Positions 1,031-30,852 of a stretch of 64,000 bases of DNA are shown here, one piece after another. The position numbers and the translations under genes are program-made. Numbering within the stretch: the stretch's first letter is position 1; the number at the start of each line of letters is the position of its first letter. The notes beneath the pieces are model-generated. The model worked only from the letters and a program-made list of their open reading frames with translations. It did no database searches and had not been told where the DNA came from. This stretch comes from Macrostomum lignano. Its lineage: Eukaryota. The stretch is taken from positions 62,001-126,000 of the forward strand of contig NIVC01002521.1 of the NCBI GenBank assembly GCA_002269645.1, in the 5' to 3' direction.

Positions 1031-1072
1031 TCTTGGGAAAGCATCCCGTACTTGCTTGCCGTATAGTACGGC
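1031..1072 (+). other. Putative SL-gene upstream flank / target remnant at the left edge of the LINE array
   Basis: TCTTGGGAAAGCATCCCGT also occurs at 13996-14014. It ends in CCGT(A), the recalled first bases of the SL exon, and is followed by GCCGTATAGTACGG, which resembles GCCGTAAAGACGG. Confidence 0.5.
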
Positions 1073-2722: not shown

Positions 2723-2740
2723 GATATTATAGGATAATAT

Positions 2741-5082: not shown

Positions 5083-5450
5083 ATCTGCTAGTTCAGCTGT
5101 TCCAATATATGGGTGCGCCCCCAAACAGTGGCTTGCCCCTCTTTCTCCTCTATGAGGATCAATCCTCTGTCAGCGCACAATCAAACAAACCAAAATATTC
5201 AATAGGCGTAGAATAATGCGGCGAGTGCTGGACTAGGTGGCGGTGCCTACGACCCAGTAACTATACAGTAAGAATTGCTGTGCCTACCTGTTAGTACTGC
5301 TGATGATACTGTGATCCGACGTATACCTTTTCCTGACTCCGCCTCTCTTTACCTTTTTACAATCCAATTATTTTAAACTGCAAATGCTTCTTTTACACCT
5401 GGCTTTTGCCTTGCTTATATTTTTACTCTTATTTTTATCCTAAGCCAAAT

Positions 5451-6310
5451 GTAACAGTAACAGTAATAAGTATTCGGCGCCTCAGCCATTGATTAGGCTC
5501 TTACGCCACTAGATAGAAATTGATTCCAGGTTGGGAGTGTACTTATGTACACTGAGATCCTAATTGGAGCTAAGAGGACTGTACAAAGGGCAAATGACAA
5601 ATCAAAAACCTCCCCGGGGGACAGTGACAGCGGAACGACATACCAGTCAGGAAGCCCGTGCCCAAAAAACCTGGTTAGATAGACCCCTTGTCAATTAGGG
5701 TTGGCCCGAAGGCCGAGAGCCGTGGCTACCATGCTGGGGCTGACCACCCACCACCCCCGGGTACTCAAGCCAAACATAACAAAACCTCCCCGGGGCCAGA
5801 GGGGGTTGAGTGAACCATTCAGGGAAGCCCGTGCCTTTTCCAGGGTTAGAAAGGCCAAAACACCGGTCATAAGACCGCCCCCACGGCCGTGGCCACCCGA
5901 AGGAGCCTCCCCCCCCAACTAAACCCCGGGTACTCTTGCCAGACAGTCTCTTATCTTTGAAGCGGCAGGAGGGCTAATCGCCGGGACTATTTCACCCTTT
6001 GCTTCGCCAACCCGCCATTTCTATTGTGACCGTGCCAACGGTCTCGTCCTGCTCAGACTCAGTCCTGGTTCTGGCACACTCCAGCTTTAATAGGGTCGCT
6101 GGCTGTTCGCTCAGAGGGCACTTGAGGGAGTCCGTCAAAGCACCAACTGGAACAGGTATAGGCCTGCCTTCCTATACAGCTACCCACAGCCCTTCCTGAT
6201 CCACTATTACCCTCCATCCCAGCCTACTCACTCATTACAAGCTTTCAGCCAGGCAGAGACAAGTTTCACGGGGGTACTGCGGTTAGGCGCCTTTATGCGA
6301 GACAAAACCA
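5451..6310 (-). mobile_element. SINE-like non-coding retroelement, copy D1
   Basis: 16-bp target duplication TTATCCTAAGCCAAAT (5435-5450 and 6311-6326); minus-strand 3' tail TTATTACTGTTACTGTTAC; high identity to 13154-13995 in inverted orientation. Confidence 0.8.
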
Positions 6311-6674
6311 TTATCCTAAGCCAAATATAGAAATAATGCTTCTTACATAAACTTTTAGTTATATGTGCCAAGCAGGCCAATCCAATATATTTCGTGTAGG
6401 GGCTGCTACTAGTAGTAGTTCCTGCCGCATAGCTATTATATTATATTTTTACCAAATACAAATATTTGAATACTGATTTAAAACCTTCGCGCTGATTCCC
6501 CTTTCGGTCCAAAATATCTTTGTGAGGACCCGTCCCAATTTCTGTAGAGTTCCTTCCTCTATCAGTTGCGACCACTTCTTTGTTTTTATTCCTAAATGTA
6601 AATAATTAATTTAAATCGAATATTTTAACTCTCGTATAACCAATACTTAGCAAATTTTTTTTAATTTAAATATA

Positions 6675-6743
6675 TCGGCAGAGCCCTACCCGGGCTGAAC
6701 CGAGGTGTCTTCAGCACCACTCGTTTAACAACAACGACGGTCC
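6675..6743 (+). promoter_or_regulatory. LINE 3'-terminal double hairpin, (AAC)n tail and GACGGTCC target remnant
   Basis: TCGG-CAG-AGCCC-loop-GGGCT-GAA-CCGA, then GGTG..CACC, then AACAACAAC GACGGTCC. Confidence 0.8.
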
Positions 6744-6747
6744 TGCT

Positions 6748-9365
6748 GTGTTAGAAGGAGCTGGCCAAGCCGGCTCCGAAGACCCCAACGCAGCCGCAGC
6801 AGCATCTGAATTTGATTCTGCCTCCGTGGCGGATTCTGCGCGCGACGTCAACGTTGACCTAGATGCCGAGGACATTAGCTTACCTTACGAGAACCCAATC
6901 GCTTTTCCAAGAGGCGCAGACAAGTCCGGCATGATAACTAAATTGCCCAGCCAAGACGTCCGCCTGGTCTACTATCCAAATATGCTACGCAGTGTTGCCA
7001 CCGATGTTTATGACAGGCTAGTTCAAGACCTTCTTCCAATAGCTGTGAGACATCGGCCCCAGGAACAGCGTCGAGTTGTGTGGTATGGCCCGGAGTATTT
7101 TTATTCCGGTGTCCCGCTTGGCGCTAACCTGAAGTGGCACCCATTAGTAGAAGATAAACGAGATTATCTAGAGCTCAATGCAGACATAAACGCACCTAAA
7201 TTCAATAGCTGCCTCATCAACTTTTACGAATCGGCAGATGATTGTATACCATATCATGCCGATAACGAGCCAGAGCTTGGCCAAGACCCCTTCATTGCTA
7301 CGGTCTCCTTCGGAGCCGTGCGCCAATTCTTGGTCAAGAATAACGAGGTTAAGCGTGTAATTGCCCAATTTGAGACCAACCCCGGCTCGGTGATCGTAAT
7401 GTCGGGAGCCTGTCAGCGAAGATGTAAGCACAGTGTCCCAGGAGTCGGCGTCCAGGAGGGTGTACGCATCTCACTCACCTTTAGGGTGACCCATCCACCT
7501 GGCGTCGGCACACCGGGGCACGGAGGCGCGACAGCGGCAGCAGCACCCGTCGGGGATGGGCCTGGCAGAGGCGGGGCGGACTCCGGTCCTGCTACGTCGG
7601 GCCCCCGGACGAGCGTGGCGACCGGGCAACCAGGCAGCAGTGGGGCGGCCGGCGCGCCCGGCCCTGCTGGGCTTGGCAGTTCTCGCAACCAAGTCCAAGA
7701 CCGTAGCAGCAACGTTGGTGCGAGGCGCGGTGGCGCAGCTCAACGGCCTAACATCCAAGGGCGCTCATATGCGTCAGCTGCGGGTTAGAATATTAATAAT
7801 TAAATTAGGAATAATAATAATAATGCTGCACCAGGCCGGCAGAATGTAGTGCCGGTCGTCTTTACCTTCGACGGCGACACCGGCGACAGCAGCTTCAGCC
7901 AAATTAGCTTCGTCAAATGGTTGGCGTCAAACTTCCAGGGCAACGCCCGAGCTACGCTGATCATCAGATCTTCCTCCGAGGGCCGCTGAGGGAGCCGAAC
8001 ATAAATGGTTGTTGTACTCTATTCTACCTTGCGCCCTGCGCCCTTGTCAATTTGTAATGTACATCAAACTAATGTACATCCACAATACTCAAGTGCACGT
8101 TGCTCTCGGAGCGAACCCTTAGACTTCAAATATATAAATCGCATTCAATGCCCAAATAGGGGCTAACTTCTTATTCAGCAAATTCTACTGGCCTCGCGTC
8201 GATTACTACAATGGTGTACCAGTTAACCGTAGACTGCCTAATGCGAGAACAACGTATAACAGACCCGCTGACCGGCCACCTCCAGTCTAATCGGTGCACT
8301 CGGTAGTAGTCCGGGGAGTGCCGGTCGAGATTGAGATGCCGGCGTTCATTCAGCACCTGCGGGAGGACGTGGGCTTGAAGATTATCTCCGCGAGCCGCAT
8401 CACGTCACGAGCGCGCAACGAGCCGACTCACCTCGTCCGCCTATTCCTACCAAATAAAGCCACTGCGGATGCTTGCCTGGCGACAGGCATCGTATCGTAG
8501 TTCACGAGGTATGCCTGCGAACCAAGCAAGACGGCTGCTCCGGCTAGGGCGCTCCAGTGCCATAAATGCCAGCGTTTCGGCCACAGCGCAAATAGGTGTC
8601 GTGCTGCTCCGCGATGCAACATCTGTGCAACATCGAGTGCCCAAATCCGGACGCGGCCAAATGTGCGAACTGTGGCGAGGCCCATCGAGCCAATCACAGG
8701 AACTGCCCTGTAGCTGCTGAAAAGCACAGCCAGGCGGCCCGGCGCGCTGCAGCCTACCAAGCCGGCGCCCGGGAAGCCACGGCAGCAGTGCAAGCAGCAG
8801 CTTTGCCACCAGTATTAGCAGCAGCAGCGACTGAGCGAGCTGCACCAACAGCAGCGCAGGCGACGGCAGCAGCCGCAGTAGCAGCAGCGCCACCCGCCCC
8901 CGCACTACGACCAGCTCCGGCGACTGCGCCTAGACCAATCGAGACCGCTGCACGGGCGTCAACGGCCACGGGGGGATCCGCACCGACGACGATTCGTACT
9001 GGCTAACCGGCCCCGGCCTCCCTGGTCGAAAGCGCCCTGTGCGCGACTCGGTTGACTCAGTGACCCAGACGGAGTTGCCAAGTGATCCGCCGCCAAGTAA
9101 TGACGTACTGCCTAACATGCTCGCTGCCATGGAAGCTATGGTGAGTGGGCTCTTACCCAGGCTGGTTCAAGCGCTTGTAGAGGTGCTTACGATCCTCTTG
9201 CCGAGCCAGGCCGAACGGCCGCCTACTACTGAAAGCACCGGTCAAACGATGCAGGACGTAGTAGGTAGGGTTCTGGCCCGGGCCCTTGCAGGAGGGTCGG
9301 AAGGTCACCAAGGTCTCGGTCAGCTGCTTGGCGCCCTCCGGCGACAGGCGGATGGCCGAACCTAG
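6748..9365 (+). pseudogene. LINE B1 ORF1 with AlkB-like 2OG-Fe(II) domain (about 6958-7488) and CCHC knuckles; disrupted
   Basis: NSCLINFYE, YHADNEPELG, KHSVPG, RISLTFR motifs; stop at 7786, a roughly 55-bp deletion near 7960, and a solo LTR at 8010-8210. Confidence 0.9.
8010..8210. mobile_element. Solo LTR (201 bp)
   Basis: TGTTGTA...TACTACA termini, exact 5-bp duplication ATGGT (8005-8009 and 8211-8215), absent from the matching position of copy B2; internal TATATAAA. Confidence 0.85.
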
Positions 9366-9382
9366 AATGAAATAAATTAACA

Positions 9383-12256
9383 ATGTTCGGTAATTACGGG
9401 CACGATAGCTCTAACCCCACTGCTTCAGGGCTCAAGATCGCCCACCTAAATTGCAGGGGGATAATACCGAAACTAAAATAACTCAGGCTCTGGGTCTCAG
9501 ACCAGAAATTAGATATAGCGTTGTTCTCTGAGACCATCCTGAAAAATACCCAAGTATGCACATTTCCGGGCTATGCTGCAGTGCGGTTTGACCTTCCAAA
9601 TACGAAGCGCGGACTCCTCCTCGTAAACACCCCACGGGTCAAGGTAGCTGATGTCCAGCTCTCGTATGACAACATCAATCATGAGGTTCTTACCTGCACA
9701 GTCACCCCTCCTGACGGCGCTTGCCCTGCTTTCAAGCTGGCCTTGATCTATCGGTCTCCATCGCCGGACAACCTTGATGTCGGTCTTTTGACTCGGCTGT
9801 CCACGGCCAAGTACTCTCTTGTTATGGGTGACCTCAACGCCAGGCACAACTTCTTGGGGGGGGGGCGAAAGTCGCAACAACAGGGCTGGCCAGCAGCTTC
9901 ATGACTGGCTCTGCGGCGACCCTGCCAATCGTCCCACCGTTCTAAACCAACCAGGTCAGTTCACTAGAATAGCCCACCGACAAGGCACGGTCTCCCGGAA
10001 TGTGCTGGACCTAGGTCTGGCCTCCAGTGACCTTGTCCCCTACATCCAGGACTTCAAAGTGGGCGATGACCTGAATAGTGACCACCTTCCAATTATTCTC
10101 ACCCTGGCGAGCAACTCCCCAGACTGGCAAGGGCTAGAAAAGGCCCGAAATTTTGCAAAAGCCAACTGGGAGGAGCTCCAGAATAGCCTTATGGAGAAAA
10201 TGATCGACGCGTGGCCCCCAGACCTTAGAACAAGGCAGCAGATTGATGAGGAGGTTGAAGTCATCATGAACGCAATCCAGAAAACCATCGAGGATAATGT
10301 CCCGGTCAGAAAAGGCCGTAGAGCCCTCCCCCAGAGGATCATTGCCATGATCAAGGAGAGGAGGAAGCTCCGGCGTCTGTACCATAGCACCAGGGACGAT
10401 AACTTCAGGCTCCTCGCGAATAGGAAGGCAAAGGAAATAAAAAGCGCCATTCATTCGTTTGAGCAGGGCCAATTCACTCAATTGTGCGAGAAAATAGTTG
10501 AAAAAAGTCAGTGTCGGAATGTCAAGGACTTCTGGCAGGACACAAAAAAACTAATGGGGCACAAAAGGGCACCACTATTCCGTCCCTGAACGATGGCGCC
10601 ACCCTCGCACACACAGACTCCGACAAGGCTGATATGCTTGCGAGAGCCTTAGATGCCAAAATGCGCCCGATTCCATCTACGGATGACGGACTGAAGAAGA
10701 AGGTTGAGCAGACTATGAAGCTCTCACTTTTCAGACCTGTCCCACCGAGCGCGGAACCGCACATGGGCCACCCCCTGGAGGCTCCTATCTCTGTTACAGA
10801 TACCCTGTGGGAACTGGACCATCTCAAAGTAGACAGTGCTCCGGGCCTGGACAAAGTTCCCAACTGCGTCCTGAAGTATGGCCTAGAGCCCATTGCGGTT
10901 ACTCGCATCACCAAATTGTTCAATGACTGCTATTGTACGGGGATCTTCCGATCGCAGTGGAAAAAAGCGGTGGTGACTATGATTCCCAAACCTGACAAAC
11001 CGCCTGAATCCCCGGGATCCTATCGGCCAATCAGTCTGACCTCCTGCCTCGGCAAGGTGTTCGAGAAGCTTTTGGTGAGAAGGCTGATAAAGCATCTTGA
11101 GGGCCAAGGCATCCTCGGTGAGGATCAGTGCGCATACAGGAAGGTCCACTCGACCTACGACAACCTTGTCCGCCTCGTCCAAGACGTCCAGGTTGGCAAA
11201 GCCAAACTCAAAAGATTGCTGGCCATTATCCTTGACGTACAAGCGGCGTTTGACTCGGTGTGGTACGACTTCCTGAGGTTCAGGATGCATGAATTCGACA
11301 CGCCGGACGCCCTCGTCAGGATCTGCTCTGACTATCTAGCAGACAGGCTAATGCAGGTGAAGGTCAACGGGGCGCTCAGCCAGCCGTACGAGCTGCAGGC
11401 GGGCGTCCCCCAAGGCGGCATTCTAAGCCCCTTCCTCTACCTGCTCTTTATCAGCACTATGCCTAGGCCGCAACATCCAAATCTTAAACGCAGCCAATTC
11501 GCCGACGACATGGCCATCTGGGCCTCGGCGGACTCCTTTGCTGGCCTCAAAACGCTCCTGCAACCCTACCTTGACCAAGTTTGGAACTGGTGCGGGGGGC
11601 AGGGGATCAAGATCAATGCCGGCAAGAGTCAGGCGATTGCGTTTAATTATAAGCCAACCCAGCGGCTCGATCTGCGCCCCAAGTTGAACCTGGGCGGCAC
11701 GAGCCTTGAATACCAAGAAGAAGTCCGGTTCCTTCGCATGAACCTGGACTTCAGGCTGACACTGAACTCCCATATTGAAAGGGTGGTCACCCATGGCCGG
11801 GCGCTTGCCTTGTCGATTAACCGCATTGCTAAGCTAACCCGGCTAAGCAGCAATACCCTAAAAATGCTATATAGGGCCTACGTGGAGAGCGTGCTGACAT
11901 ACGGCGCCCCCGTACTCAACATCATTGCCCCAAGCAACCTCAATAAGTTGCAAAAGATCCTAAATCTAGCCATTAGGATTTGCTACGGTGCCCCGAGTTA
12001 TACGCAAGTAGCCTACCTTCACGAGCTAGCGGCTATCCCCATGCTGGCCGGTAGGATCAGAGCCCTTGGTGTAGGATGGCTGACGAAGGTGAAGGCCGCG
12101 GGACACCATGACTTTCAAATCGAGCCGGAGCTTCCTAGGGCGGCTCGTAATCGTCCTCCAGTGCTGAACCTCCTGTGGGACAGCCTAAAACGGAGGCATG
12201 CCAATAGGTTAGCTGCAGTGAATGCGGCGGCCCGCGCGGCCAACAACCCGCCCTAA
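9383..12256 (+). pseudogene. LINE B1 ORF2 (APE-RT), near full length with a stop and homopolymer frameshifts
   Basis: All APE and RT motifs present (FADD); TAA near 9479, frameshifts at the G-run (about 9855) and A-run (about 10565); no RNase H and no C-terminal CCHC seen. Confidence 0.93.
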
Positions 12257-13153
12257 GCTGACCCCTATTCAGGCTCAAAACTAGATTGCGCGAGCTAAGC
12301 CATCGGCTTCCCCCCCTTCCGACTTCTAAGTCCTCTTCGCCTTTCAACATCCTTCAGTATCCATAAAACCACAAAAAATGCTTGCTTACTTCCTTGACTT
12401 CTTCCCCCCGTCTCCTTGATAGCCGTGTGTCAGCGCAGAAAACTTATAACCAAAACTTGCTACTAAATATGAAAATTAGGCGAGTGCTTGACTGGTTGGG
12501 GAGAGGCCTATAAACCAGCAGTAAATTGGGGGTTTAAACGAGAACTTTCTTACCTGTGATCGCCTCCTTTTGCATTGTGTCGCACCGCCGTTTTTCTTTT
12601 CTTTTCTTTTGTATTTAATACTGCTGTTTTATTTTATAATCCAATATTTACACGCGCGCCTTCTACAACTTGGCCAAATGCGTTTTTTATCCGGCTTTTG
12701 CCATTTTACACCCAAAAATTTTTTTTTATTCTATACCCAATATTCTTTTATTTACGTGTTTTTACTCGTTAATGCCGTACCATACCTACTAAATTATTTT
12801 CTCAAATGGCTGCTACTTATAGTAGCGTCTTTAACATACTTCAAACATTTCTTTTATTTTTCATTCATTATCAATACCAATAACAGTTTTATCTCTCAGT
12901 AATGCCAATATTGACTGCACTACTCCCCTTACTGTATGGTCCAGATCTTTGTGAGGACCCCCCTCTCTATCAGAATTCCCTCTATTTTTTTAGTGCAAAA
13001 TATTTTATTCTCCGAATGTAAATATCAATATATATATATCGAATTTTTAATTTCCTGTACCAATACTCATAATTTTAAAATAATAATACATCGGCAGAGC
13101 CCTACTCGGGCTGAACCAAGGTGCCCCTTCTTAGCACCGTCGTTTAAGAACAG

Positions 13154-16341: not shown

Positions 16342-19293
16342 ATGAGCAGGCAGATCCCGCCTACTAAACTTACAAAACCCTCTGGGCTACCTGCGGCCAA
16401 GCGTGCTGACAACCGCTCATCGGTAGATAAGATGGAGGCCTTTGGCCGAAATCTCCTAGGCCTAGGAAAAAAACCAGCACGGCCAGCTGCCGGTCCTTCT
16501 GGTGCTGCAACTACCGCTGGAGCAACGAGCGCAGTTAGCAAAGTGCCCAACAGCAACAGGGCCTCCAGGAGCAGCGCGGACAGCATCCCGCCGGATGCCC
16601 CGTACAGCCAAGCAGCCATTAGCTGTCCGGCTGGCATGGACTGTGCACCAGCACCGCCATCGGACACGCCACCATCTCCTAGGGAAAAGGCTGAGGCAGT
16701 TACGCCGGCTTCAATGCCAAATCCAGCCGAAGTACCTAAGGTACAATATTCCAATGACAACGCATCTACTAGACCAAAGTCTCCGGTGCTTGCAATCCCA
16801 GCAGAGCAGCCAAAATCACCAGAAGGCGCCATCTCCATATCGTCGGCAAGTAGCTCTGGCTCTGCGACTGTGTTGGAAGGTGCTGGCCAAGCCGGCTCCG
16901 AAGACCCCAACGCAGCCGCAGCAGCATCTGATTCTGCGTCTGAGGCAGACTCCGCGAACGCCGGCTGTGTCGATCTCGATGCTGAGGACGCAAGCATACC
17001 GTATGAGAATCCAATAGGCTTTCCAATAGGCGCGGACAAATCGGGGCTACAAATCAAGCTGCCTAGTCAAGACGTACGACTGGAGTACTATCCGAACATG
17101 CTCCGCAGCGTAGCCGCCGATGTCTACGACCGGATAATCCAAGATCTCCTGCCTATCGCGATACGTCACCGGCTTCAGGAACAGCGACGAGTGGTCTGGT
17201 ACGGGCCGGAGTACTCTTACTCTGGAGTTCCGCTCAGCGCCAACAAAAAATGGCACCCGCTAGTCGAGGACATGAAGGACTACCTCGAGCTCAACGCGGA
17301 TATTGGTGCTCCAAAATTTAATAGTTGCCTCATTAATTTCTACGAAACGGCTGATGACTGCATTCTATTCCACGCCGATAACGAACCTGAACTCGGCAGG
17401 GACCCTTTCATCGCTACGGTCTCCTTTGGTGCAGTACGCCAATTCCAAATTAAGAATAATGAGGACCAACGAATTGTAGCGCAATTTGAGACTAAGCCCG
17501 GCTCAGTAATAGTGATGTCCGGTGCATGCCAACGTAAGTGCAAGCACAGTGTCCCAGGAGTCGGCGTCCAGGACGGGGTACGCATATCGCTCACCTTTAG
17601 GGTGACATATCCACCAGGCGTCGGCACACCGGGACACGGAGGCCCAACTGCAGCAGCTGCACACGTCGGAGACGGGCCTGGCAGTGGCCGGGCGGGCGCC
17701 AGCCTGGCCGCGCCGGGCCCCCGGACAGCGATGACCAGCGGGCAGCTAGGAGATCGCGGAGCGGCCGGCGCGCCCGGCTCTGCGGTCCCTGGCGGCCCAC
17801 GAGCCCAGGGCAACGGCGGTGGCAATGTCGGCGGTGCGGGGCGGGGCGGCGATCGCCGGTCCTACGCTGAAATGGCGGCGAACAACAACCAAGATAGATC
17901 ACGGCCCCCGAACAATAACAGGGGAAGTAGTAATGTGGTACCAGTAGTGTTCAACACTGCGGCAGAAACGAGTCAAATTGATTTTCTAAAGTGGCTCGCG
18001 GCCAACTTCCAAGGGTCGGCCCGGGCTACACTCACCAAGAAGTTGACCCATGAAGTCGGCTTCCTCGTGTTTCCGGCTACTCCGCGTGACCACCAGTTGT
18101 TCCTGCGTGGGCCTCTGCGTGAGCCCCAGTTCGCGGGGGGGCCGGTGACGAGGCGCTTACCAAAGGCTCGACCGGACCCAAGAGCTAGGCCTGCTGCGCC
18201 ACAGCGACCAATGACCCGAGCGGTCCACTCGTTCGTGGTGCGCGGCGTGCCTCCGGAGGTCGATGCCAGCGACTTCAAGCGGCACCTGCAAGAAAGCGCT
18301 GGTCTTAATATCATATCAGCTAGCCGTATCACTGCTAGGCGAGACAACAAGCCTACTAACCTAATCAGAATCTTTGTCCGTAACAAACAGACAGTGGACG
18401 CCTGTCTAGCTACAGGAATCGTCACGGATTTTACAACATACCAGTGCGAGCAGAACAAGACCGCAGCTCCGGCACGAGCACCGCAGTGCCAAAACTGCCA
18501 GCGCTTCGGTCACCACGCCCAGAGGTGCAAGGCGGCCAAGCGTTGTCGAATCTGCGCGGCCGAGCACCACTGGCGAGACTGCGACAGCCAGGACGCGGTG
18601 AAATGTGCCAACTGCAAGGAGCCGCACAGAGCAAACTACCGCAACTGCCAGGTGGCGATCGATTGCCACAGTGCGGCCCAAAGGCGTGCGGCTGCCTACG
18701 CAGCGGGCGCCCGAGAAGCCGCGGCAGCAACAGACAGTTCGACCGCTCCACCACCTATTGCAGCAGCAGCGGCGGTAGTAGCATCAGCAGCATCAGCAGA
18801 GGCAGCGGCAGCAGCGGCGCCACCCGCCCCCGCCCCCGCACTGGCACCAGCTCCGGCAGCAGCACCGAGATGGGTCGACGCCGCAGCACGGGCGACAACG
18901 GCGACAGGGGGCGACGATCCGTTTTGGCTCACCGGCCCTGGCCTCCCTAGCCGAAAGCGCCCTGTGCGCGAATCGACCGACTCGGAGACGCAGACAACTG
19001 CGCCGGATGAATCCTCCAGCAATGACACGCCGCCAAATGCCAGAGAAGTCTCCCAGCTTCAGGAACTGGTGAGTGGGTTCCTTCCCCTCTTGGTCCAGGC
19101 ACTAGTAGAGGTGCTGTCGACTCTCTGGCAGAGCCCGGCTGAACGGCCGCCTACTACCGAAAGCTCCCGTCAAACGGTGCAAGACGTAGTAGGTAGGGTT
19201 CTGGCCCGGATCCTCGAAGGCGAATCGAACAGTCACCAGGGTCTTGGTCAGCTGCTTGGCGCCTCCCGGCGACAGGCGGATGGCCAGACCTAG
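16342..19293 (+). CDS. LINE ORF1p, 983 aa: low-complexity N-terminus, AlkB-like 2OG-Fe(II) dioxygenase, G/A linker, PRE_C2HC-like region, 3 CCHC zinc knuckles
   Basis: Uninterrupted ORF. AlkB at about 17074-17604 with NFY, H-A-D, distal H (KHSVP) and R-ISLTF-R; knuckles CQNCQRFGHHAQRC, CRICAAEHHWRDC, CANCKEPHRANYRNC. Confidence 0.95.
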   Translation: MSRQIPPTKLTKPSGLPAAKRADNRSSVDKMEAFGRNLLGLGKKPARPAAGPSGAATTAGATSAVSKVPNSNRASRSSADSIPPDAPYSQAAISCPAGMDCAPAPPSDTPPSPREKAEAVTPASMPNPAEVPKVQYSNDNASTRPKSPVLAIPAEQPKSPEGAISISSASSSGSATVLEGAGQAGSEDPNAAAAASDSASEADSANAGCVDLDAEDASIPYENPIGFPIGADKSGLQIKLPSQDVRLEYYPNMLRSVAADVYDRIIQDLLPIAIRHRLQEQRRVVWYGPEYSYSGVPLSANKKWHPLVEDMKDYLELNADIGAPKFNSCLINFYETADDCILFHADNEPELGRDPFIATVSFGAVRQFQIKNNEDQRIVAQFETKPGSVIVMSGACQRKCKHSVPGVGVQDGVRISLTFRVTYPPGVGTPGHGGPTAAAAHVGDGPGSGRAGASLAAPGPRTAMTSGQLGDRGAAGAPGSAVPGGPRAQGNGGGNVGGAGRGGDRRSYAEMAANNNQDRSRPPNNNRGSSNVVPVVFNTAAETSQIDFLKWLAANFQGSARATLTKKLTHEVGFLVFPATPRDHQLFLRGPLREPQFAGGPVTRRLPKARPDPRARPAAPQRPMTRAVHSFVVRGVPPEVDASDFKRHLQESAGLNIISASRITARRDNKPTNLIRIFVRNKQTVDACLATGIVTDFTTYQCEQNKTAAPARAPQCQNCQRFGHHAQRCKAAKRCRICAAEHHWRDCDSQDAVKCANCKEPHRANYRNCQVAIDCHSAAQRRAAAYAAGAREAAAATDSSTAPPPIAAAAAVVASAASAEAAAAAAPPAPAPALAPAPAAAPRWVDAAARATTATGGDDPFWLTGPGLPSRKRPVRESTDSETQTTAPDESSSNDTPPNAREVSQLQELVSGFLPLLVQALVEVLSTLWQSPAERPPTTESSRQTVQDVVGRVLARILEGESNSHQGLGQLLGASRRQADGQT

Positions 19294-19310: not shown

Positions 19311-21119
19311 ATTTTCGGTAATAACGGGCACGATAGCTCGAACCCCACTGCCTCAGGGCTAAAGATTGGCCACCTAAACTGCAGGGGGGTAATACCGAAA
19401 CTAAAAGAACTCAGGCTCTGGGTCTCAGATCAGAAATTGGATATTGCATTGTTCTCTGAGACCATCCTGAAAAATACCCAAGTATGCACTTTCCCGGGCT
19501 ATGCTGCAGTGCGGTTTGACCTTCCGAATACGAAGCGCGGACTCCTCCTTGTTCACACCCCACGGGTTAAGGTAGCTGACGTCCAGCTCTCGTATGACAA
19601 CATCAACCACGAGGTCCTTACCTGCACAGTCACTCCTGTTGACGGCGCATGTCCTCCTTTCCAACTATCTCTGGTCTATCGGTCCCCGTCGCCGGATAAC
19701 CTCGACACTGCACTCTTGACGAGGCTGTCCTCGGCTAAATACTCGCTCATCATGGGAGACCTCAACGCTAGACACAGCTTCTTGGGTGGTGAAAGTCGCA
19801 ACAACAGAGCAGGGCAGCAGCTCCATGATTGGCTATGCGGCGATCCATCCCACCGCCCCACCGTTCTCAACCAACCAGGCCAGTTCACTAGAATAGCCCA
19901 CCGGCAAGGCGTTGTGTCCCGGAATGTGCTTGACCTTGGGTTAGCCTCCGGTGACCTCGTCCCATATGTCCAAGACTTTAAAGTGGGCTCTGACCTGGAC
20001 AGTGACCATCTCCCAATCATACTCACCCTGGCGAGTAACTCTCCAGATTGGCAAGGGCCGGAGAAGGCTAGGAACTTTGCCAAGGCAAACTGGGATGAGT
20101 TCCAAAACTCTTTGATGGAAAAACTGGTACATGCGTGGCCTCCAGACCTTAGTACTAGGCAGCAGATTGATGCGGAGGTCGACATCATCACAAACGCGAT
20201 CCAGAAAACCATCGAGGACAATGTCCCGGTTAGAAACAGCCGTAGAGCCCTCCCCCAGAGGATCATTGCCATGATCAAGGAGAGGAGGAGGCTCCGGCGT
20301 CAGTACCACAGTACCAGGGACGACAATTTTAGGCTGCTCGCGAATAGAAAGGCGAAAGAAATAAAAAGCGCTATTCATTCGTTTGAACAAGGCCAGTTTA
20401 CCCAAATGTGCGAGAAAATAGTTGAAAAAAGTCAATGCCGGAATGTCAAGGACTTCTGGCAGGACACAAAAAAATTGATGGGGCCTAAGAAGGGCACCAC
20501 TATCCCGTCCTTAAATGATGGCGCCACCCTCGCACATACTGACTCAGACAAAGCTGATATGCTAGCGAGAGCACTAGATGCCAAAATGCGCCCGATGCCA
20601 TCGACTGACGAGGATCTGAAGAAGAGGGTTGAGCAGGCTATGAAGCTCCCCATCTTTAGACCAGTCCCCTCGGGCGTAGATCCACACATGGGCCACCCCC
20701 TGGAGGCTCCTTTTTCTGTTACAGACACCCTCTGGTAGCTGGACCACCTAAAAGTTGATAGTGCTCCGGGCCTGGACAAAGTTCCGAACTGCGTCCTTAA
20801 ATATGGCCTGGAGCCTATAGCAGTCACCCGCATCACTTAACTCTTTAATGATTGCTATCGTACGGGCATCTTCCCATCGCAGTGGAAAAAAGCGGTGGTG
20901 ACGATGATTCCTAAACCTGACAAACCTCCTGAATCCCCGAGATCCTATCGGCCCATCAGCCTGACCTCCTGCCTCGGCAAGGTGTTCGAGAAGTTATTGG
21001 TGAGGAGGCTGATGAAGCATCTTGAGGGCCAGGCTATCCTCGGCGCGGATCAATGTGCGTACCGGAAGGTTCACTCAACTTATGATAACCTTGTCCGCCT
21101 CGTCCAAGACGTCCAGGTG
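19311..21119 (+). pseudogene. LINE A2 ORF2, 5' part (APE plus N-terminal RT)
   Basis: ATT in place of ATG at 19311; APE motifs; stops at 20736 and about 20837; interrupted at VQV by the transposon. Confidence 0.92.
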
Positions 21120-24100
21120 CACAGCGCGCAGGAGCTGCGTGTAAGGGTTAAAAAAATCAAGTACAAAGCGACCTGCTTTATTGTGTTCACCATTACCTGG
21201 TAAGTATTTTTCTAGAGTTTTTAAAAAATCTGCCGATGTCAAGCTCCACAATCAGTAAATTATTTAATTAGCATTAATTGCATGGCGAAAGGTCTAAACA
21301 AGTCATGATTTTTATCCAAGGACCATTGATTTTTTAAGCTAGGGTCGTTGCACTATTACATGCATGTTATGTATAGTGTATTATATAATTTTTGTGACAG
21401 TTTATTGTATAAATTCGTGTGCATAGCCTAGAATTGGAAACAATTTATAGTGTTAAATAAATAGAAAGTAAGTTACACATAGTAATAGAAAAGTATAACT
21501 AAAAAACAGTAAGAAATACAGATAGGCGACAAATTTATGTCTTTTCAAATTGTAGAAAATAATTTTAGTTCTTGGTGTAGCCACAGTTGGAGTAAAGCTG
21601 AGAGAAAATTTGTGGCAGAATGTCCATAGACTATTTCGTGCCATGAGAGTCTAAAACACTGCATGACATGAGAAGCCTTGCTGTGAAGTTTCAGGGGTTG
21701 ATTTGTCTATGACCAGACCTCAAAATAGAGAGCTCCAACTGTAACCTCACCAAAAATTAAACAAAAAACCTGAATTTGTCCCCTATTTGTCAAAACAAGA
21801 CTTCTGGTGCACCAATCGGTTTTAAAGTAACTCGGATATTATTGCACCTTCAACAGAACTGCTTACAGCACAGTAGCCCATTTTACAGATGCCGCGAGCT
21901 GTACACCGTGATGCACCTAAGCAAACGCCGAGCATACTCCGGATGAGTTGCATCCACCTTGAAGCGTTGACTCCACATGTCGCTGAAGTCGCGATGTGCC
22001 GACTCCATCGCCTGCTCAGACCAAAACCCAAGGCCTCGGCGACACCCATATTGTACTGCCATCGCTTCCAAAAACTGCGGCACGTGGTCAATGAGGGCAT
22101 GGGCCTTCGGAGTGATGTTGATGGCCAGAGCGTGGTATGCCGCCTCGAACTCTTTGACTGCTGTATCATAGCCTTCAAGCAGTTGTTGGCCGAAGCACTT
22201 CTGCTGGACAGCTCGCAGGCAGCTGAATGCATGGGCGACAGGCACTCCGCTGAAGGCAGCATGGTCAGCGAGGATCTGGCGCAGGCTGTCGACTCCACCA
22301 AGCAGTCGGTCGCACTCATTGCCATTGAACTGGCTGCCGTGATACGGTGAGCGCCGTACGTGAAGAGCCTCAGCCCACTGTGCACCACGGACTCCGTCGG
22401 GACCCAATGCTGTCAGGCGCTGCTCAAGCTCGTCGTACAGCCTGTTGACAAGGCCTAGCAGCAGGTGGAGCTCCATGGGTGGCACGGCTTCTAGCGTGTT
22501 TGAACTGTCTGGCCAATTCAGCAGTGGTTGCCTGATGCAGTTGTGGAATGGCTCTCCTGATGGCTTTGAGCTTCGTTGCCCCTCGATGCGCTGATACTGG
22601 GCAGCTTGGCTGCGAATAGAGCCAAAAGTCCGCAATCTGACACTGCGATGGGGATTGGCGAACTCTTTTCGAGGCGTCTCGCACCACGGGCAGGGATGGG
22701 CGCTGCTGGCGCTCTGCAGTCCAAGAAGCACATTTGCAAGTTTCATGTCCACGGAGCTGCAGAAAGACACGTCTTCTAGGTTCAGCAGATTGAGCACAGT
22801 TTGCACGTTCTCATAGTACTCCGGTACTTTTTCAACTGCTGCGATAATCAATAGCTTCCTTACACCACCTTCGGCAAAAGGGCTGCTGCCGGCCTCGGTG
22901 ACACCGCCTAGTAGAACAGATGACTGCTCCCCGGACCGGACCAATGTCATGCAAACTTTAAAAAAGCCGCGTCCTCCATCAATACCAATCTTAAGCAGGA
23001 AGCTGCCAGGATCAGGATCCATTCTCCGCCGTGCCAGCACGTAGCCCACCAAGCCAGAGACGTTGGAGCAGAACACAACAGTCCGCGTTTCAAATTCGCC
23101 CGTGCTGCAACGGACTGGGACTGACTCTGTTGCATAAAATGGATCCAACTCGCTATTCAATTCTGCCAGGCGATGCAGGAGGTTTGGCTCGATCGAACTG
23201 CGACCCTTCCACTCACGGAAGAACTGGGCCGCCTGTCTGGTTTGCCGACCACTCAAACCGATCGCATCCTGCATCCTGGCAATCTCACTAGCCGGCACTG
23301 ATTTGTCACCAAATGCACCCGCGGAGCACCTGCTACTCTGAGCGGACACGCTTAGCGTGATTGGGCGGCCTCGAGTTGCCAGCCGAATAGGCGAATCGCC
23401 ACCTGCGTCTGTTAACTTGGCTTTGAGGACGTCACTAGCATGAATTTCTGAACCACGCGGATCACGTGACAGCTCAGAGCAGATGTTATTTAGCCAGCGA
23501 GATTGCGTACAGGTGTGGCTAAGACCCCTGCCAATGGTGGAGTGACATCTCTGGCAGATGGTGATGGGACGAGCAGGTGGCACCTCCTTGTTTGGCGAAT
23601 CGGTTTTCGGTCTGCCAAGGCGATGCGGCTCCGGCTTCCAGGTGCCGAGTCCTTTGCCGATTGGACTTTCTCTGGCAATCTCACAGAGACAGCAGCTGCA
23701 CTTCGGGTGGCCCCTTGTTTCCTTTGTCGGTACGACTTTTGAAAAATCAAAAGGGGCAGGAAGAGCTTCAGAAGTTCGATTCCCCCGTTCAATATCCAGC
23801 AGCAGACCCTGGCATCGAGCACACAGAGCAGCTGGGAGAAACTCGTTCTTCAAATCGTAGTTTGCATAAAAGTACCGCTGGATGCGAGGTAGAGCTGCTT
23901 TGCCAATGCGCTGCATGCCTGACCCGCGCTTAAAGCACACAATGCAGACCTTCAGCCGGTTCTCTTCGTGAGATTTTGAGTAGTTTGGCATGGTGGTGTT
24001 CAGTTCAAGGCTTTTCAATTCCTAAATGCTGAGATGAGCTGATTTATGATAAATTAATCATTTATATAGCTCAAAAACAAAAAATCTGCCTGTCTGAGAG

Positions 24101-24491
24101 TGACGCTAAATGCACTCCATTTTTTCGGTGACGCAACTGACGCTACACTGATAGAGGTTGATCATGCGCACTTAGGGGTGTACGGCGCCTCAGCTTTCGC
24201 TATTCGTCATGCATGTACACTGTGCCTTGGGGCTTGGGGGTACGCACTCATGGGTGTGTATTTTGCCTTTAATTTAAAAAATCAATGGTCCTTGGATAAA
24301 AATCATGACTTGTTTAGACCTTTCGCCATGCAATTAATGCTAATTGAATAATTTACTGATTATGGAGCTTGACATCGGCAGATTTTTTAAAAACTCTAGA
24401 AAAATACTTACCAGGTAATGGTGAACACAATAAAGCAGGTCGCTTTGTACTTGATTTTTTTAACCCTTACACGCAGCTCCTGCGCGCTGTG
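21120..24491 (-). mobile_element. Chapaev/Transib-like (RAG1-fold DDE) DNA transposon, copy 1, 3372 bp
   Basis: 218-bp TIRs beginning CACAGCG (21120-21337 and 24274-24491), 5-bp duplication AGGTG; removing the element restores the LINE RT frame. Confidence 0.92.
21883..23991 (-). CDS. DDE transposase, 702 aa from the first ATG
   Basis: N-terminal H-x7-CxxC...CxxC Zn motif; KIGIDGG, DMKLANVLLG..HPCPWC, MELHLLLG, FNGNEC, ITPKAH..HVP, SEQAMESAH, matching the Transib/RAG1/Chapaev motif order. Confidence 0.9.
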   Translation of the reverse strand: MPNYSKSHEENRLKVCIVCFKRGSGMQRIGKAALPRIQRYFYANYDLKNEFLPAALCARCQGLLLDIERGNRTSEALPAPFDFSKVVPTKETRGHPKCSCCLCEIARESPIGKGLGTWKPEPHRLGRPKTDSPNKEVPPARPITICQRCHSTIGRGLSHTCTQSRWLNNICSELSRDPRGSEIHASDVLKAKLTDAGGDSPIRLATRGRPITLSVSAQSSRCSAGAFGDKSVPASEIARMQDAIGLSGRQTRQAAQFFREWKGRSSIEPNLLHRLAELNSELDPFYATESVPVRCSTGEFETRTVVFCSNVSGLVGYVLARRRMDPDPGSFLLKIGIDGGRGFFKVCMTLVRSGEQSSVLLGGVTEAGSSPFAEGGVRKLLIIAAVEKVPEYYENVQTVLNLLNLEDVSFCSSVDMKLANVLLGLQSASSAHPCPWCETPRKEFANPHRSVRLRTFGSIRSQAAQYQRIEGQRSSKPSGEPFHNCIRQPLLNWPDSSNTLEAVPPMELHLLLGLVNRLYDELEQRLTALGPDGVRGAQWAEALHVRRSPYHGSQFNGNECDRLLGGVDSLRQILADHAAFSGVPVAHAFSCLRAVQQKCFGQQLLEGYDTAVKEFEAAYHALAINITPKAHALIDHVPQFLEAMAVQYGCRRGLGFWSEQAMESAHRDFSDMWSQRFKVDATHPEYARRLLRCITVYSSRHL

Positions 24492-25148
24492 AGGTGGGCA
24501 AAGCTAAACTAAAAAGGATTCTGGCCATCCTCCTTGACGTGCAAGCGGCGTTCGACTCAGTGTGGTATGACTACCTGAGGTTCAGGATGCATGAAGTCAG
24601 CACGCCGGACGCCCTCGTCAGGATCTGCTCTGACTACCTAGCAGACAGGCTAATGCAGGTGAAGGTAAATGGGGAGCTCAGCCAGCCGTACGAACTACAG
24701 GCGGGCGTCCCCCAGGGTGGCATTCTGAGCCCCTTCCTGTACCTGCTCTTTATCAGCACCATGCCTCGGCCAATACAACCAAACCTCAAGCGAAGCCAAT
24801 TTGCCGACGATATGGCCATTTGGGCCTCGGCGGACTCCTTTGCTGGCCTCAAGACACTCCTGCAACCCTACCTGGACCGCGTGTGGAAGTGGTGTGGGGG
24901 GCAGGGGATAAAGATCAACGCCAGCAAGAGTCAGGTAATCGCTTTCAATTATAAGCCAACTCAGCGACTCGATCTTCGCCCCAAGCTGAAACTTGGAGGC
25001 ACGAGTCTTGAATACCAAGAAGAGGTCCGGTTCCTTGGCATGAACCTGGACTATCGGCTGACCCTTAACTCGCATGTTGAAAGAGTAGTCAGCCACGGCC
25101 GGGCGCTTGCCCTATCCATCAACCGCATTGCCAAGCTGACCCGGCTAT
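24492..25148 (+). pseudogene. LINE A2 ORF2, 3' part (RT core, C-terminus deleted)
   Basis: LDVQAAFDSVW, GVPQGGILSP, QFADD; jumps into the 3'UTR after AKLTRL. Confidence 0.92.
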
Positions 25149-25560
25149 TTCACACCCCAAATGCTTTTATTTATGGACCTACCATTGTACATATTACAAA
25201 TAACAAACTAAATTATTTTATTGCCTGGCTACTACTTAAAGTAGTCATATTTAACTATTGCCAATATTTTTTTTAGTACTTTAAATTTTCATCCAATAAT
25301 GCGTGCACTACCCCTACAGTATGGTCCAGATCTTTGTGAGGACCCCCTCTATTCAGAATTCCCCCTATTTTAGTGCAAAATATTCTTAATGTAACAAAAT
25401 GTAAATATTTTATTTTATATACCAAATAGTAAACATTAACTCGTTTTTTAATACTTCGCAAACTAAATTCGCCTCTATATTTTTAAATAAATCGGCAGAG
25501 CCCATCTCGGGCTGATCCGAGGGTGCCCCAATTTTCACCCACTCGTTTAACAACAACAAC

Positions 25561-25571
25561 AAAGACGGTCT
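25561..25571 (+). other. Target remnant AAAGACGGTCT (putative SL exon 5' part)
   Basis: Directly follows the (AAC)4 tail; identical 11-mer at 25925 and 27228. Confidence 0.75.
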
Positions 25572-25924: not shown

Positions 25925-25937
25925 AAAGACGGTCTCT

Positions 25938-27227: not shown

Positions 27228-27238
27228 AAAGACGGTCT

Positions 27239-30600: not shown

Positions 30601-30852
30601 TAGTTTGGTTTTTGTTATTTTATTATTAATAAATATAAATTTTGTAAACTAACAAATGCTATAATATTTAATAATTTATTTGGATTGAATTTTTTATGTA
30701 AAATTAAATAAATATAATAAATATAATGTATAATGAAATGAATGATATAGTAGTAAATAAATATAAGAATAGTAATTATAAAGCAAAAGCATAGCCATAG
30801 AGAATTATATATCTTTAAATTATTATATATAATAATATAATTGTTAACTAAT

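What the first reader, a model, noticed from the sequence alone, without database searches (positions are those of the whole stretch)
16342..19293. LINE ORF1p fused to an intact AlkB-like RNA/ssDNA demethylase domain
Seen: the 983-aa ORF1 places a complete 2OG-Fe(II) fold (N-x-Y, H-A-D, distal H, R-x5-R all intact) ahead of a standard PRE_C2HC-like region and three CCHC knuckles. The domain recurs in copies B1 and B2. Established: AlkB/ALKBH2/3 and the AlkB domains of plant flexi/closteroviruses oxidatively remove m1A/m3C from single-stranded nucleic acid, related enzymes remove m6A, and m1A blocks reverse transcriptase. Inference: the element packages its own 'eraser' into the RNP to repair or demethylate its template or evade host RNA marking. 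AlkB has turned up sporadically in mobile elements, so novelty needs a literature and Repbase check.
Basis: partly seen in the sequence, partly recalled or inferred. Interest (0 to 1): 0.92.

Follow-up and report, generated by a model that had tools for sequence, protein, structure and literature searches.

The report
LINE gag protein carrying AlkB demethylase
A lineage of LINE retrotransposons, found here and in the flatworm Macrostomum, has an ALKBH3-like nucleic-acid demethylase built into its RNA-binding ORF1 protein and has kept it intact under strong selection, which suggests that methyl lesions or marks on the element's own template limit its copying.

Summary
Window 16342-19293 (+) is an intact 983-aa LINE ORF1. 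Residues ~236-425 are a complete AlkB-type dioxygenase domain (Pfam PF13532, E 2.4e-23). The best sequence and structure match is human ALKBH3, and every catalytic motif is present. Behind it lie a disordered linker, two RRM folds and three CCHC knuckles, followed by an endonuclease/reverse-transcriptase ORF2 that is broken in this copy.

The fusion is not a one-off. Two more copies in the window carry it. So do predicted proteins of Macrostomum lignano and contigs from several unrelated sequencing runs, including a full-length element with both ORFs open (L002). AlkB-bearing elements form one clade on the RT tree (support 100) and on the AlkB tree (support 85-90). Catalytic residues are invariant across lineages only ~30% identical, and dN/dS of the domain is about 0.05.

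Most likely mechanism (inferred): an eraser tethered to ORF1p removes m1A/m3C-type lesions from the element's RNA or single-stranded DNA, so that reverse transcription reaches the 5' end.

I found no paper describing AlkB in a LINE ORF1. Plant-virus AlkB domains and an orchid Ty3/Gypsy ALKBH5-like ORF are the precedents. I rate it a new variant of a known kind. Repbase and Dfam could not be checked.

The parts
16342..19293 (+). ORF1 of LINE copy A, 983 aa, intact: disordered N-terminus, AlkB domain, Gly/Ala/Pro linker, RRM, RRM, three CCHC knuckles, Ala/Pro-rich stretch, C-terminal helix
17047..17616 (+). AlkB (ALKBH3-like) 2OG/Fe(II) dioxygenase domain, aa ~236-425
   Evidence: PF13532 E 2.4e-23. 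ALKBH3 E 3e-25. Foldseek ALKBH3 E 1e-15, TM 0.79.
17335..17379 (+). N332-x-Y334 (2OG/substrate pocket) and H344-x-D346 (iron ligands)
   Evidence: Invariant in 7 ORF1s at ~30% identity.
17542..17601 (+). Distal iron-ligand H402 and the R414-x5-R420 2OG-binding motif
17944..18156 (+). RRM-like domain 1 (aa ~535-605)
   Evidence: beta-alpha-beta-beta-alpha-beta in the model, pLDDT ~90. Foldseek matches tandem RRM proteins.
18226..18453 (+). RRM-like domain 2 (aa ~629-704). This region aligns to PRE_C2HC of an arthropod relative.
18487..18648 (+). Three CCHC zinc knuckles (aa 716-769)
   Evidence: Conserved in the alignments.
19320..21119 (+). ORF2 of copy A, first part: AP-type endonuclease and start of RT. 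There is no ATG where relative L012 has its start codon, and there are two in-frame stops.
   Evidence: PF14529 and PF00078. Frame read. Junctions.
21120..24491 (-). Not part of the LINE: a 3373-bp DNA transposon with 218-bp terminal inverted repeats, inserted into the RT
   Evidence: Second copy at 46588-49959 is 99.97% identical.
24492..25276 (+). ORF2 of copy A, rest of the RT. About 900 bp of the C-terminal part is missing relative to copy C.
   Evidence: PF00078 E 1.2e-23. blastn layout.
25293..25571 (+). 3' UTR and conserved 3' tail of copy A (stem-loop, (CAA)n, GACGGTC)
6746..13152 (+). Copy C: 5'-truncated at aa ~177, intact AlkB domain (6931-7500, ORF 6748-7788), interrupted gag, ORF2 with a 581-aa RT ORF (10511-12256)
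27239..29610 (+). Copy B: 5'-truncated at aa ~247, open 748-aa ORF 27255-29501 with AlkB (to 27773) plus gag. Cut off just after ORF1.
1069..6745 (+). Copy D: 5'-truncated at aa ~436, so no AlkB. gag, ORF2 and 3' tail are present. It abuts copy C head-to-tail.

Best explanation
This is a copy of an endonuclease-type LINE. Its ORF2 is decayed but its ORF1 is open. The lineage acquired an ALKBH3-type Fe(II)/2-oxoglutarate demethylase once and fused it, through a long flexible linker, in front of a standard two-RRM plus three-CCHC ORF1 protein.

Shown:
- the domain's identity and completeness;
- its fixed position in ORF1;
- its presence in a monophyletic LINE lineage across several genomes;
- strong purifying selection on it.

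Inferred mechanism: ORF1p coats the element's own RNA in cis, which holds the tethered dioxygenase on that RNA. There it oxidatively removes N1-methyladenine, N3-methylcytosine and similar Watson-Crick-face methyl groups. These lesions stall reverse transcriptases. Removing them should raise the share of target-primed reverse transcription events that reach the 5' end, that is, full-length and still mobile daughters. The same activity could clean the single-stranded cDNA.
For: Identity of the domain:
- PF13532 E 2.4e-23.
- PDB sequence scores: ALKBH3 96 bits, far above ALKBH2 at 48 and E. coli AlkB at 21.
- The model matches ALKBH3-ssDNA crystal structures best (TM 0.79). ALKBH5, ALKBH6 and E. 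coli AlkB are seven orders of magnitude weaker in E-value.

Catalytic competence:
- N-x-Y, H-x-D, the distal H and R-x5-R are invariant in seven ORF1s that share only 28-34% identity overall.

Selection:
- dN/dS of the AlkB segment is 0.065 (A-B) and 0.047 (B-C).
- Within one ORF pair, AlkB gives 0.059, against 0.54 for the adjacent linker and 0.45 for the C-terminus.

Family trait:
- AlkB and gag lie in one protein in P0001, P0002, P0003, P0005, P0153 and P0155.
- L002 is a full-length element: an 843-aa AlkB-ORF1 plus a 948-aa EN-RT ORF2, both open. L012 is similar.
- RTs of AlkB-bearing elements form a clade with support 100.
- Their AlkB domains form one clade with support 85-90.

RNA-binding context:
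- Two RRM folds plus three knuckles.

Established knowledge:
- ALKBH3 acts on 1-meA/3-meC in ssDNA and RNA.
- Plant-virus AlkB domains repair these lesions in RNA (PMC2553587).
- m1A and m3C block reverse transcriptases (my own knowledge; this is the basis of AlkB-treated tRNA sequencing).
Against: - No activity, substrate or RNP data exist.
- m1A and m3C are rare in long RNAs, so the size of the benefit is unknown.
- The window itself shows that three of the four copies are 5'-truncated, so the domain does not abolish truncation.
- Specificity cannot be read from sequence. Some AlkB relatives, including one potyviral AlkB (PMC9452765) and the orchid Gypsy protein (PMC9289625), act on m6A.
- The hairpin that carries the R-E-D motif in ALKBH3 is two residues shorter here and reads R-H-R, so nucleic-acid handling may differ from ALKBH3.
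Confidence: 0.55

Rival explanations
1. Epitranscriptomic counter-defence. The domain erases a regulatory mark (m6A, or enzymatically written m1A) that the host places on transposon RNA to target it for decay, sequestration or chromatin silencing. The benefit would be escape from surveillance rather than lesion repair.
For: - The orchid Ty3/Gypsy AlkB protein is an m6A demethylase in vitro (PMC9289625).
- A potyviral AlkB removes m6A (PMC9452765).
- m6A affects L1 and ERV RNA fate in mammals (PMC7873242, listed; text quoted).
- Strong selection on the domain is equally compatible with this reading.
Against: - The domain is ALKBH3-like, not ALKBH5/FTO-like, in both sequence and fold. The known m6A mRNA erasers belong to the ALKBH5/FTO branches (my own knowledge).
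- Nothing is known here about an m6A system in the host.
Confidence: 0.2
2. DNA-directed role. The enzyme works on single-stranded DNA at the integration site or on the first-strand cDNA, removing 1-meA/3-meC that would block second-strand synthesis.
For: - ALKBH3 prefers single-stranded DNA as well as RNA, and the best structural matches are ALKBH3-ssDNA complexes.
- CCHC knuckles and RRMs bind ssDNA as well as RNA (one search lists RRM-ssDNA complexes among the matches).
Against: The cDNA is newly made and short-lived, so it has little time to acquire lesions. ORF1 proteins are mainly RNA-bound (established knowledge for L1 and I factor). There is no specific evidence here.
Confidence: 0.15
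3. The domain acts on host RNAs (for example tRNA m1A/m3C) to alter translation or stress responses in favour of the element. Alternatively, it serves only as an extra nucleic-acid-binding module without catalysis.
For: ALKBH3 demethylates tRNA in human cells (my own knowledge). The domain sits on a ~100-residue flexible linker, so it could reach other RNAs.
Against: Invariant iron and 2OG ligands across ~30%-identity lineages argue against a purely non-catalytic role. Cis-preference of ORF1 proteins makes host RNAs a less likely main substrate.
Confidence: 0.07
4. Artefact or accident: an assembly chimera, or a host ALKBH3 gene or pseudogene that a LINE happened to land next to.
For: None beyond the a priori rarity of such fusions.
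Against: - The same junction, in one continuous frame, occurs in three diverged copies in the window, in M. lignano proteins and in independent assemblies.
- The domain is under selection together with the element.
- The RT and AlkB trees agree.
Confidence: 0.02

Closest known systems
Human ALKBH3 (PDB 2iuw, 8jnk, 8jnr, 9ncz)
   Same: Same fold and the same iron/2OG ligands. It is the best sequence match (92-96 bits, ~33% identity over ~190 aa) and the best structural match (TM 0.79). The best tree found places the transposon clade together with animal ALKBH3.
   Different: - It is a domain inside a 983-aa transposon protein, not a free-standing ~286-aa enzyme.
- The R-E-D hairpin is shorter and reads R-H-R.
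- It lies outside the sampled animal ALKBH3 clade, which includes a Macrostomum sequence, P0020, so it is not a recent copy of the host gene.
- Activity is untested.
AlkB domains in replicases of plant RNA viruses (Flexiviridae, Closteroviridae, some potyviruses): PMC2553587, PMC544882, PMC9452765
   Same: A selfish RNA-templated replicon carries its own AlkB, fused into a larger protein. The proposed role is to keep the RNA template free of methyl lesions or marks. Structures are similar (Foldseek E 1e-10 to 1e-16).
   Different: Only 15-29% identity. There the domain is fused to a replicase polyprotein, here to a gag-like RNA chaperone. The hosts are plants versus an animal, and the replication is RNA-to-RNA versus reverse transcription into the genome. 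The acquisition was independent.
Orchid (Phalaenopsis) Ty3/Gypsy elements with an ALKBH5-like ORF (PMC9289625)
   Same: A retrotransposon lineage that fixed an AlkB-family demethylase. There the protein binds RNA and is catalytically active in vitro.
   Different: That is an LTR element with a separate extra ORF. Its domain is from the ALKBH5/ALKBH9-10 branch (m6A), and it is a recent, genus-restricted acquisition. Here the element is a non-LTR element, the domain is in-frame within ORF1p and of the ALKBH3 branch, and the lineage is old (RTs are down to 38-41% identical within the clade).
Type I ORF1 proteins of Jockey-superfamily LINEs (RRMs plus three CCHC), including type IC with an N-terminal PHD finger (PMC4120745)
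   Same: The same core: two RRMs, three CCHC knuckles, upstream of an APE-RT ORF2. An accessory module sits N-terminal to the RRMs.
   Different: The accessory module is an enzyme (AlkB) rather than a PHD reader. AlkB is absent from that paper's catalogue of ORF1 domains.
Esterase-containing ORF1 (type IV) of CR1/L2 LINEs (PMC4120745 and references there)
   Same: It is the only other enzymatic-fold domain listed there in a LINE ORF1 (my reading of PMC4120745). It shows that ORF1 can recruit catalytic modules.
   Different: A different fold and chemistry (SGNH-type hydrolase, lipid or membrane role proposed). There the esterase replaces the RRM/CCHC part rather than preceding it.

Membership tests
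AlkB family of Fe(II)/2OG dioxygenases (Pfam PF13532) | Significant match to the family profile above the curated threshold | tested here: met
   83.8 bits against a cut-off of 31.2, E 2.4e-23. Copies B and C score 80.5 and 78.6 bits.
AlkB family of Fe(II)/2OG dioxygenases (Pfam PF13532) | Iron-binding facial triad H-x-D...H | tested here: met
   H344, D346 and H402 align to the ALKBH3 ligands. They are invariant in 7 ORF1s.
AlkB family of Fe(II)/2OG dioxygenases (Pfam PF13532) | 2-oxoglutarate binding: N-x-Y and R-x5-R | tested here: met
   N332/Y334 and R414/R420.
AlkB family of Fe(II)/2OG dioxygenases (Pfam PF13532) | Double-stranded beta-helix core with an N-terminal nucleotide-recognition extension | tested here: met
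   AlphaFold model with domain pLDDT 70-85. Foldseek TM 0.71-0.79 to ALKBH3 over ~190-207 columns. This is a predicted, not a solved, structure.
AlkB family of Fe(II)/2OG dioxygenases (Pfam PF13532) | Oxidative demethylase activity | not testable with these tools
   Needs an enzyme assay.
ALKBH3 subfamily | Closer to ALKBH3 than to other AlkB branches, and falls in the ALKBH3 clade | tested here: inconclusive
   - Scores: ALKBH3 96, ALKBH2 48, E. coli AlkB 21 bits. ALKBH3 also ranks first by structure.
- In the quick tree the transposon clade lies outside the starred animal ALKBH3 clade, among poorly resolved ~200-aa proteins; the one checked (P0125) sits on a gene-dense, probably bacterial contig.
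- A tree that forces transposon plus animal ALKBH3 together has a likelihood 68.6 units higher, p-AU 0.83.
- Overall it is best read as sister to ALKBH3, not shown to be nested in it.
ALKBH3 subfamily | R-E-D hairpin motif linked to the single-strand preference of ALKBH3 (my own knowledge) | tested here: not met
   The aligned segment reads R275-H-R277 and the hairpin is 2 residues shorter.
Non-LTR (LINE) retrotransposon with AP-type endonuclease | ORF2 with an endonuclease and an RT domain downstream of ORF1 | tested here: met
   PF14529 and PF00078 in copy A pieces and in copy C. Intact 946-948-aa ORF2 in relatives L002 and L012.
Non-LTR (LINE) retrotransposon with AP-type endonuclease | 5'-truncated copies and a defined 3' tail | tested here: met
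   Copies B, C and D are truncated at different points. A conserved stem-loop/(CAA)n/GACGGTC tail is present. A similar tail occurs in L002.
Non-LTR (LINE) retrotransposon with AP-type endonuclease | Assignment to a named clade (CR1, L2, Jockey, I, ...) | not testable with these tools
   - No reference RT set (Repbase) was at hand.
- The nearest outside RTs are <=34% identical, and some are labelled 'jockey' by NCBI.
- Neighbouring clades include RNase H-bearing elements.
- A non-poly(A) stem-loop tail points to the 'stringent' CR1/L2-like type (my inference).
Type I LINE ORF1p (RRM plus CCHC) | One or two RRM folds followed by three CCHC knuckles | tested here: met
   Two beta-alpha-beta-beta-alpha-beta units with pLDDT ~90. 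Foldseek matches tandem RRMs of HuR, NONO, U2AF65 and Sxl. Knuckles by pattern and conservation.
   No hit at E<=1 in aa 508-983. There is only indirect support: relative P0008 carries PF07530 at the part that aligns there. Sub-threshold zf-CCHC hits in P0153 are too weak to count as support.

The most novel reading that the evidence does not exclude
An old animal LINE lineage has depended for a long time on a built-in ALKBH3-type eraser. (Within the clade, RTs are down to ~38% identical and AlkB domains ~30-40%.) This would mean that Watson-Crick-face methylation of the RNA template, whether damage or a host-written mark, is a real and selectable barrier to target-primed reverse transcription in vivo. 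If the methylation is host-written, this would be the first sign of an RNA-methylation defence against LINEs together with its counter-measure.
Probability: 0.35. Interest if true: 0.8.

Novelty: new variant of a known kind. Interest (0 to 1): 0.66.

Why it matters
ORF1 proteins of LINEs are thought of as RNA chaperones with a small set of accessory modules (coiled coil, PHD, esterase). A conserved nucleic-acid repair or demethylation enzyme inside ORF1p adds a new functional class.

It also gives a natural experiment on an open question: do base methyl lesions or marks on the template limit retrotransposition and cause 5' truncation? The system is directly testable with an enzyme assay, a catalytic mutant, and counts of full-length versus truncated insertions.

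It parallels the independent recruitment of AlkB by plant RNA viruses and by an orchid LTR element. That points to a recurring pressure on RNA-templated selfish elements.

Practically, dozens of 'Fe2OG dioxygenase domain-containing' proteins in the Macrostomum proteome are probably transposon ORF1s rather than host genes.

Tried and rejected
- **Word-index protein search.** Searching with the whole ORF1 and with aa 236-432 returned nothing. Low-complexity words and <50% identity defeat it. The exhaustive HMMER search was needed.
- **Exact look-up of the two window ORF1s.** Not on record, so the source genome could not be named. No M. lignano protein is more than 73% identical to the window. 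The host is therefore given only as 'Macrostomum-like'.
- **Naming the neighbours of the transposon AlkB clade.** The clusters carry no names. One neighbour (P0125) sits on a gene-dense, bacterial-looking contig.
- **The free quick AlkB tree.** It suggested a bacterial-like neighbourhood. The constrained search found a better tree that places the transposon clade with animal ALKBH3. I therefore do not claim a bacterial origin.
- **Pfam search for PRE_C2HC or zf-CCHC in the C-terminal half.** No hits. Fold prediction replaced it.
- **LINE clade assignment.** No reference set was available, and the names are generic.
- **Literature.** Eight searches found no AlkB-in-LINE report. Two leads, the tubeworm and krill genome papers, concerned host ALKBH2 only.
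- **Chimera or host-gene explanation.** Rejected; see the rival explanations.
Full report

Yes. The ORF listing returns one ORF at exactly 16342..19293 (+), 983 aa.

Pfam finds a single domain, PF13532 (2OG-FeII_Oxy_2), at aa 273-420 with E 2.4e-23, 83.8 bits against a gathering score of 31.2.

Against all PDB sequences the best matches are four human ALKBH3 entries (E 3e-25, aa 246-430). ALKBH2 follows at 1e-10. With the domain alone the order is ALKBH3 96 bits, ALKBH2 48 bits, E. coli AlkB 21 bits.

- N332-F-Y334
- H344-A-D346
- H402 in KHSVP
- R414-ISLTF-R420

An AlphaFold model of aa 200-800 was built on a seven-sequence alignment. The AlkB part has pLDDT 70-85. Foldseek ranks ALKBH3-ssDNA crystal structures first (E 1e-15, TM 0.79), then ALKBH2. 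ALKBH5, ALKBH6 and E. coli AlkB come only at about 1e-8.

**2. The rest of ORF1**

- The N-terminal ~235 residues and aa ~426-530 are Ala/Gly/Pro/Ser-rich and predicted to be disordered.
- A second model, of aa 521-783, has mean pLDDT 79.6. It shows two beta-alpha-beta-beta-alpha-beta units. Their best structural matches are tandem RRM proteins: HuR, NONO, U2AF65, Sxl and PABP.
- Three CCHC knuckles follow at aa 716-729, 735-747 and 755-769.
- Pfam gives no PRE_C2HC or zf-CCHC hit here, even at E<=1. A pseudoscorpion relative (P0008) carries PF07530 at the part that aligns to aa ~632-700.

This is the classical type I LINE ORF1 (two RRMs plus three CCHC) described for Jockey-superfamily elements. 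That catalogue lists CCHC, RRM, PHD, coiled coil, CTD, esterase and zf/lz modules, and no AlkB (PMC4120745).

**3. The element and its copies**

ORF2 follows ORF1: an endonuclease (PF14529, 19437-20738) and an RT (PF00078, 20895-21203 and 24494-25276).

Copy A is dead as an autonomous element:
- It has no ATG where the relative L012 has its ORF2 start.
- It has two in-frame stops.
- A 3373-bp DNA transposon with 218-bp TIRs is inserted at 21120-24491.
- About 900 bp of the ORF2 C-terminus is missing relative to copy C.

Three more copies lie in the window:
- **D** (1069-6745) is truncated behind AlkB.
- **C** (6746-13152) is truncated at aa ~177 and has an intact AlkB domain.
- **B** (27239-29610) is truncated at aa ~247 and has an open 748-aa AlkB-gag ORF.

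All three AlkB domains keep every catalytic motif.

**4. Is it selected?**

Pairwise dN/dS over 185 AlkB codons is 0.065 (A-B, dS 0.46) and 0.047 (B-C, dS 1.5). A-C is saturated at synonymous sites, with dN 0.079.

Along the A-B ORF pair:

| Region | dN/dS |
|---|---|
| AlkB | 0.059 |
| linker | 0.54 |
| RRM2 | 0.11 |
| knuckles | 0.08 |
| C-terminus | 0.45 |

Divergence that accumulates after insertion is neutral. Such low ratios therefore mean that most of the divergence arose in active lineages in which AlkB function mattered to the element.

**5. Is the linkage confined to this locus?**

No. An exhaustive HMMER search of 1.84 billion representative proteins gave 14 hits below 1e-30. The best carry AlkB and gag in one polypeptide in the same order:

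| Protein | Length (aa) |
|---|---|
| P0001 | 757 |
| P0002 | 843 |
| P0003 | 962 |
| P0005 | 892 |
| P0153 | 688 |
| P0155 | 861 |

Their sources are Macrostomum lignano and Logan assemblies of runs SRR31628392-437. The M. lignano entries (PAA49615.1, PAA54533.1, A0A1I8GKP7 and others) are named only 'hypothetical' or 'Fe2OG dioxygenase domain-containing protein'.

- L002 is a 9-kb contig with an open AlkB-ORF1 (843 aa) and an open EN-RT ORF2 (948 aa).
- L012, from SRR24204725, has AlkB-gag followed by an open 946-aa ORF2 that is 57% identical to the window's RT.
- In a seven-sequence ORF1 alignment at 28-34% identity, the invariant columns are concentrated in AlkB: NSCL-N-Y, H-x-D, E-x-ELG, the distal H, and R-x2-LTFR.

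**6. One acquisition, and from where?**

RTs of AlkB-bearing elements (window C, L012, P0182, L013, L002) form a clade with support 100 among 75 RTs. They are 38-57% identical to each other, against <=34% to anything else found. For L013 the contig ends before the AlkB position, so its membership rests on the RT alone.

In a 138-row AlkB tree all transposon-linked domains form one clade, with SH-aLRT 85, or 90 when P0015 is included. The clade has three sub-lineages, and M. lignano has members in two of them.

Animal ALKBH3 (human, a crinoid, and M. lignano P0020) forms a separate starred clade. The free quick tree put the transposon clade among unresolved ~200-aa proteins; the one whose contig I checked (P0125) is gene-dense and looks bacterial. 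A search constrained to keep transposon and animal ALKBH3 together found a tree 68.6 log-likelihood units better, p-AU 0.83.

The best current reading is a single, old acquisition of an ALKBH3-type gene. It is not a recent copy of the host gene. The exact donor is unresolved.

Viral AlkB domains are structurally similar but only 15-29% identical.

**7. Mechanism**

*Shown:* an apparently catalysis-competent ALKBH3-type domain is tethered by a flexible linker to an RRM/CCHC RNA-binding protein of a LINE. It has been maintained by selection across a whole lineage.

*Inferred:*
- ORF1p binds the element's RNA in cis. This is established for L1 and I-type elements, not tested here.
- That places the dioxygenase on the template.
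- There it removes m1A/m3C-type methyl groups that stall reverse transcriptase.
- This would raise the yield of full-length cDNA.

This is the rationale demonstrated biochemically for plant-virus AlkB domains, which repair m1A/m3C in RNA (PMC2553587).

Alternatives:
- Erasure of a host-written mark such as m6A, as for the orchid Gypsy ALKBH5-like protein (PMC9289625) and a potyviral AlkB (PMC9452765).
- Action on single-stranded DNA during integration.
- Action on host tRNAs.

The ALKBH3 affinity makes lesion-type substrates more likely than m6A, but sequence cannot settle specificity. The ALKBH3 R-E-D hairpin is altered here to R-H-R and is two residues shorter.

**8. Novelty**

Eight full-text searches of PMC open access and bioRxiv found no description of an AlkB domain in a non-LTR retrotransposon.

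Precedents exist for plant RNA viruses and for one LTR retrotransposon lineage. LINE ORF1s are known to be modular, with PHD or esterase modules.

The sequences themselves are already in public databases as unannotated flatworm proteins. Repbase and Dfam could not be consulted.

I therefore rate this a new variant of a known kind. It is of real interest to transposon and RNA-modification researchers, but it is not categorically new.

Noticed in passing
6676-6745, 13092-13152, 25493-25571, 25855-25935, 27161-27238; also the L002 3' end: All copies of this LINE end in a conserved ~80-nt tail. It has a stem-loop (CGG-CAG-AGCCC / GGGCU-GAx-CCG, with a U-A to G-C compensatory change between copies), then (CAA)n, then GACGGTC. 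There is no poly(A). L002 from another organism has a similar tail. This looks like a 'stringent' 3'-end recognition signal.
   Followed up: partly
6745/6746, 25571/25572, 27238/27239: Head-to-tail arrays. The 5'-truncated copies C and B begin immediately after the GACGGTC end of a preceding tail. Copy A's tail is followed directly by a ~365-bp non-autonomous unit. That unit (25571-25935, repeated at 26873-27238) ends in the same tail and looks like a SINE-like parasite of this LINE. The pattern suggests insertion into the element's own tail, or microhomology priming on (CAA)n.
   Followed up: partly
17080-17783 vs 27237-27940, and the gag parts of A, B, C and D: ORF1 is a mosaic. The AlkB segment of A is closest to B (87-90% nt, dS 0.45). 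The RRM/CCHC segment of A is unalignable to B at nucleotide level (dS >3) and instead pairs with D, while B pairs with C. This points to recombination or template switching between subfamilies, as reported for ORF1 modules in PMC4120745.
   Followed up: partly
21120-24491 and 46588-49959: Two copies, 99.97% identical, of a 3373-bp DNA transposon with 218-bp terminal inverted repeats. It carries a 711-aa ORF on the minus strand (21883-24018) with no Pfam hit even at E<=1. It is very recently active, and its transposase family is unidentified.
   Followed up: partly
14027-14410 (and 14403-15278, 43049-43258, 45347-46009): This is the C-terminal end of an ORF1 from a second sub-lineage of the AlkB-LINE clade: 41% identical to the C-terminus of M. 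lignano P0013, E 2e-15. It is followed by ORF2-like remnants that recur elsewhere in the window. The genome therefore holds at least two lineages of the clade.
   Followed up: partly
L011 (Logan SRR19430222), gene 2120-5158: P0156 is a 1012-aa protein with an AlkB domain at aa 530-665. In the tree it is sister to the transposon AlkB clade. It has no detectable gag, and the next gene carries HTH_animal/DUF8422. It may be another kind of mobile element or a domesticated copy.
   Followed up: no
30615-31280 (-) and 33602-34024 (+): A mariner/Mos1-type transposase N-terminus (HTH_48, E 6e-9), truncated, and a separate small ORF ending in a CCHC knuckle (zf-CCHC, E 1e-5). The window is a transposon-dense region with no obvious host gene.
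   Followed up: partly
L001 3585-3590; L004 3108-3114: In two relatives the ORF1 stop and the ORF2 start are adjacent (UAGAUG in L001, UGAAAUG in L004). This suggests ORF2 translation by termination-reinitiation. Other members have spacers of 48-430 nt.
   Followed up: no
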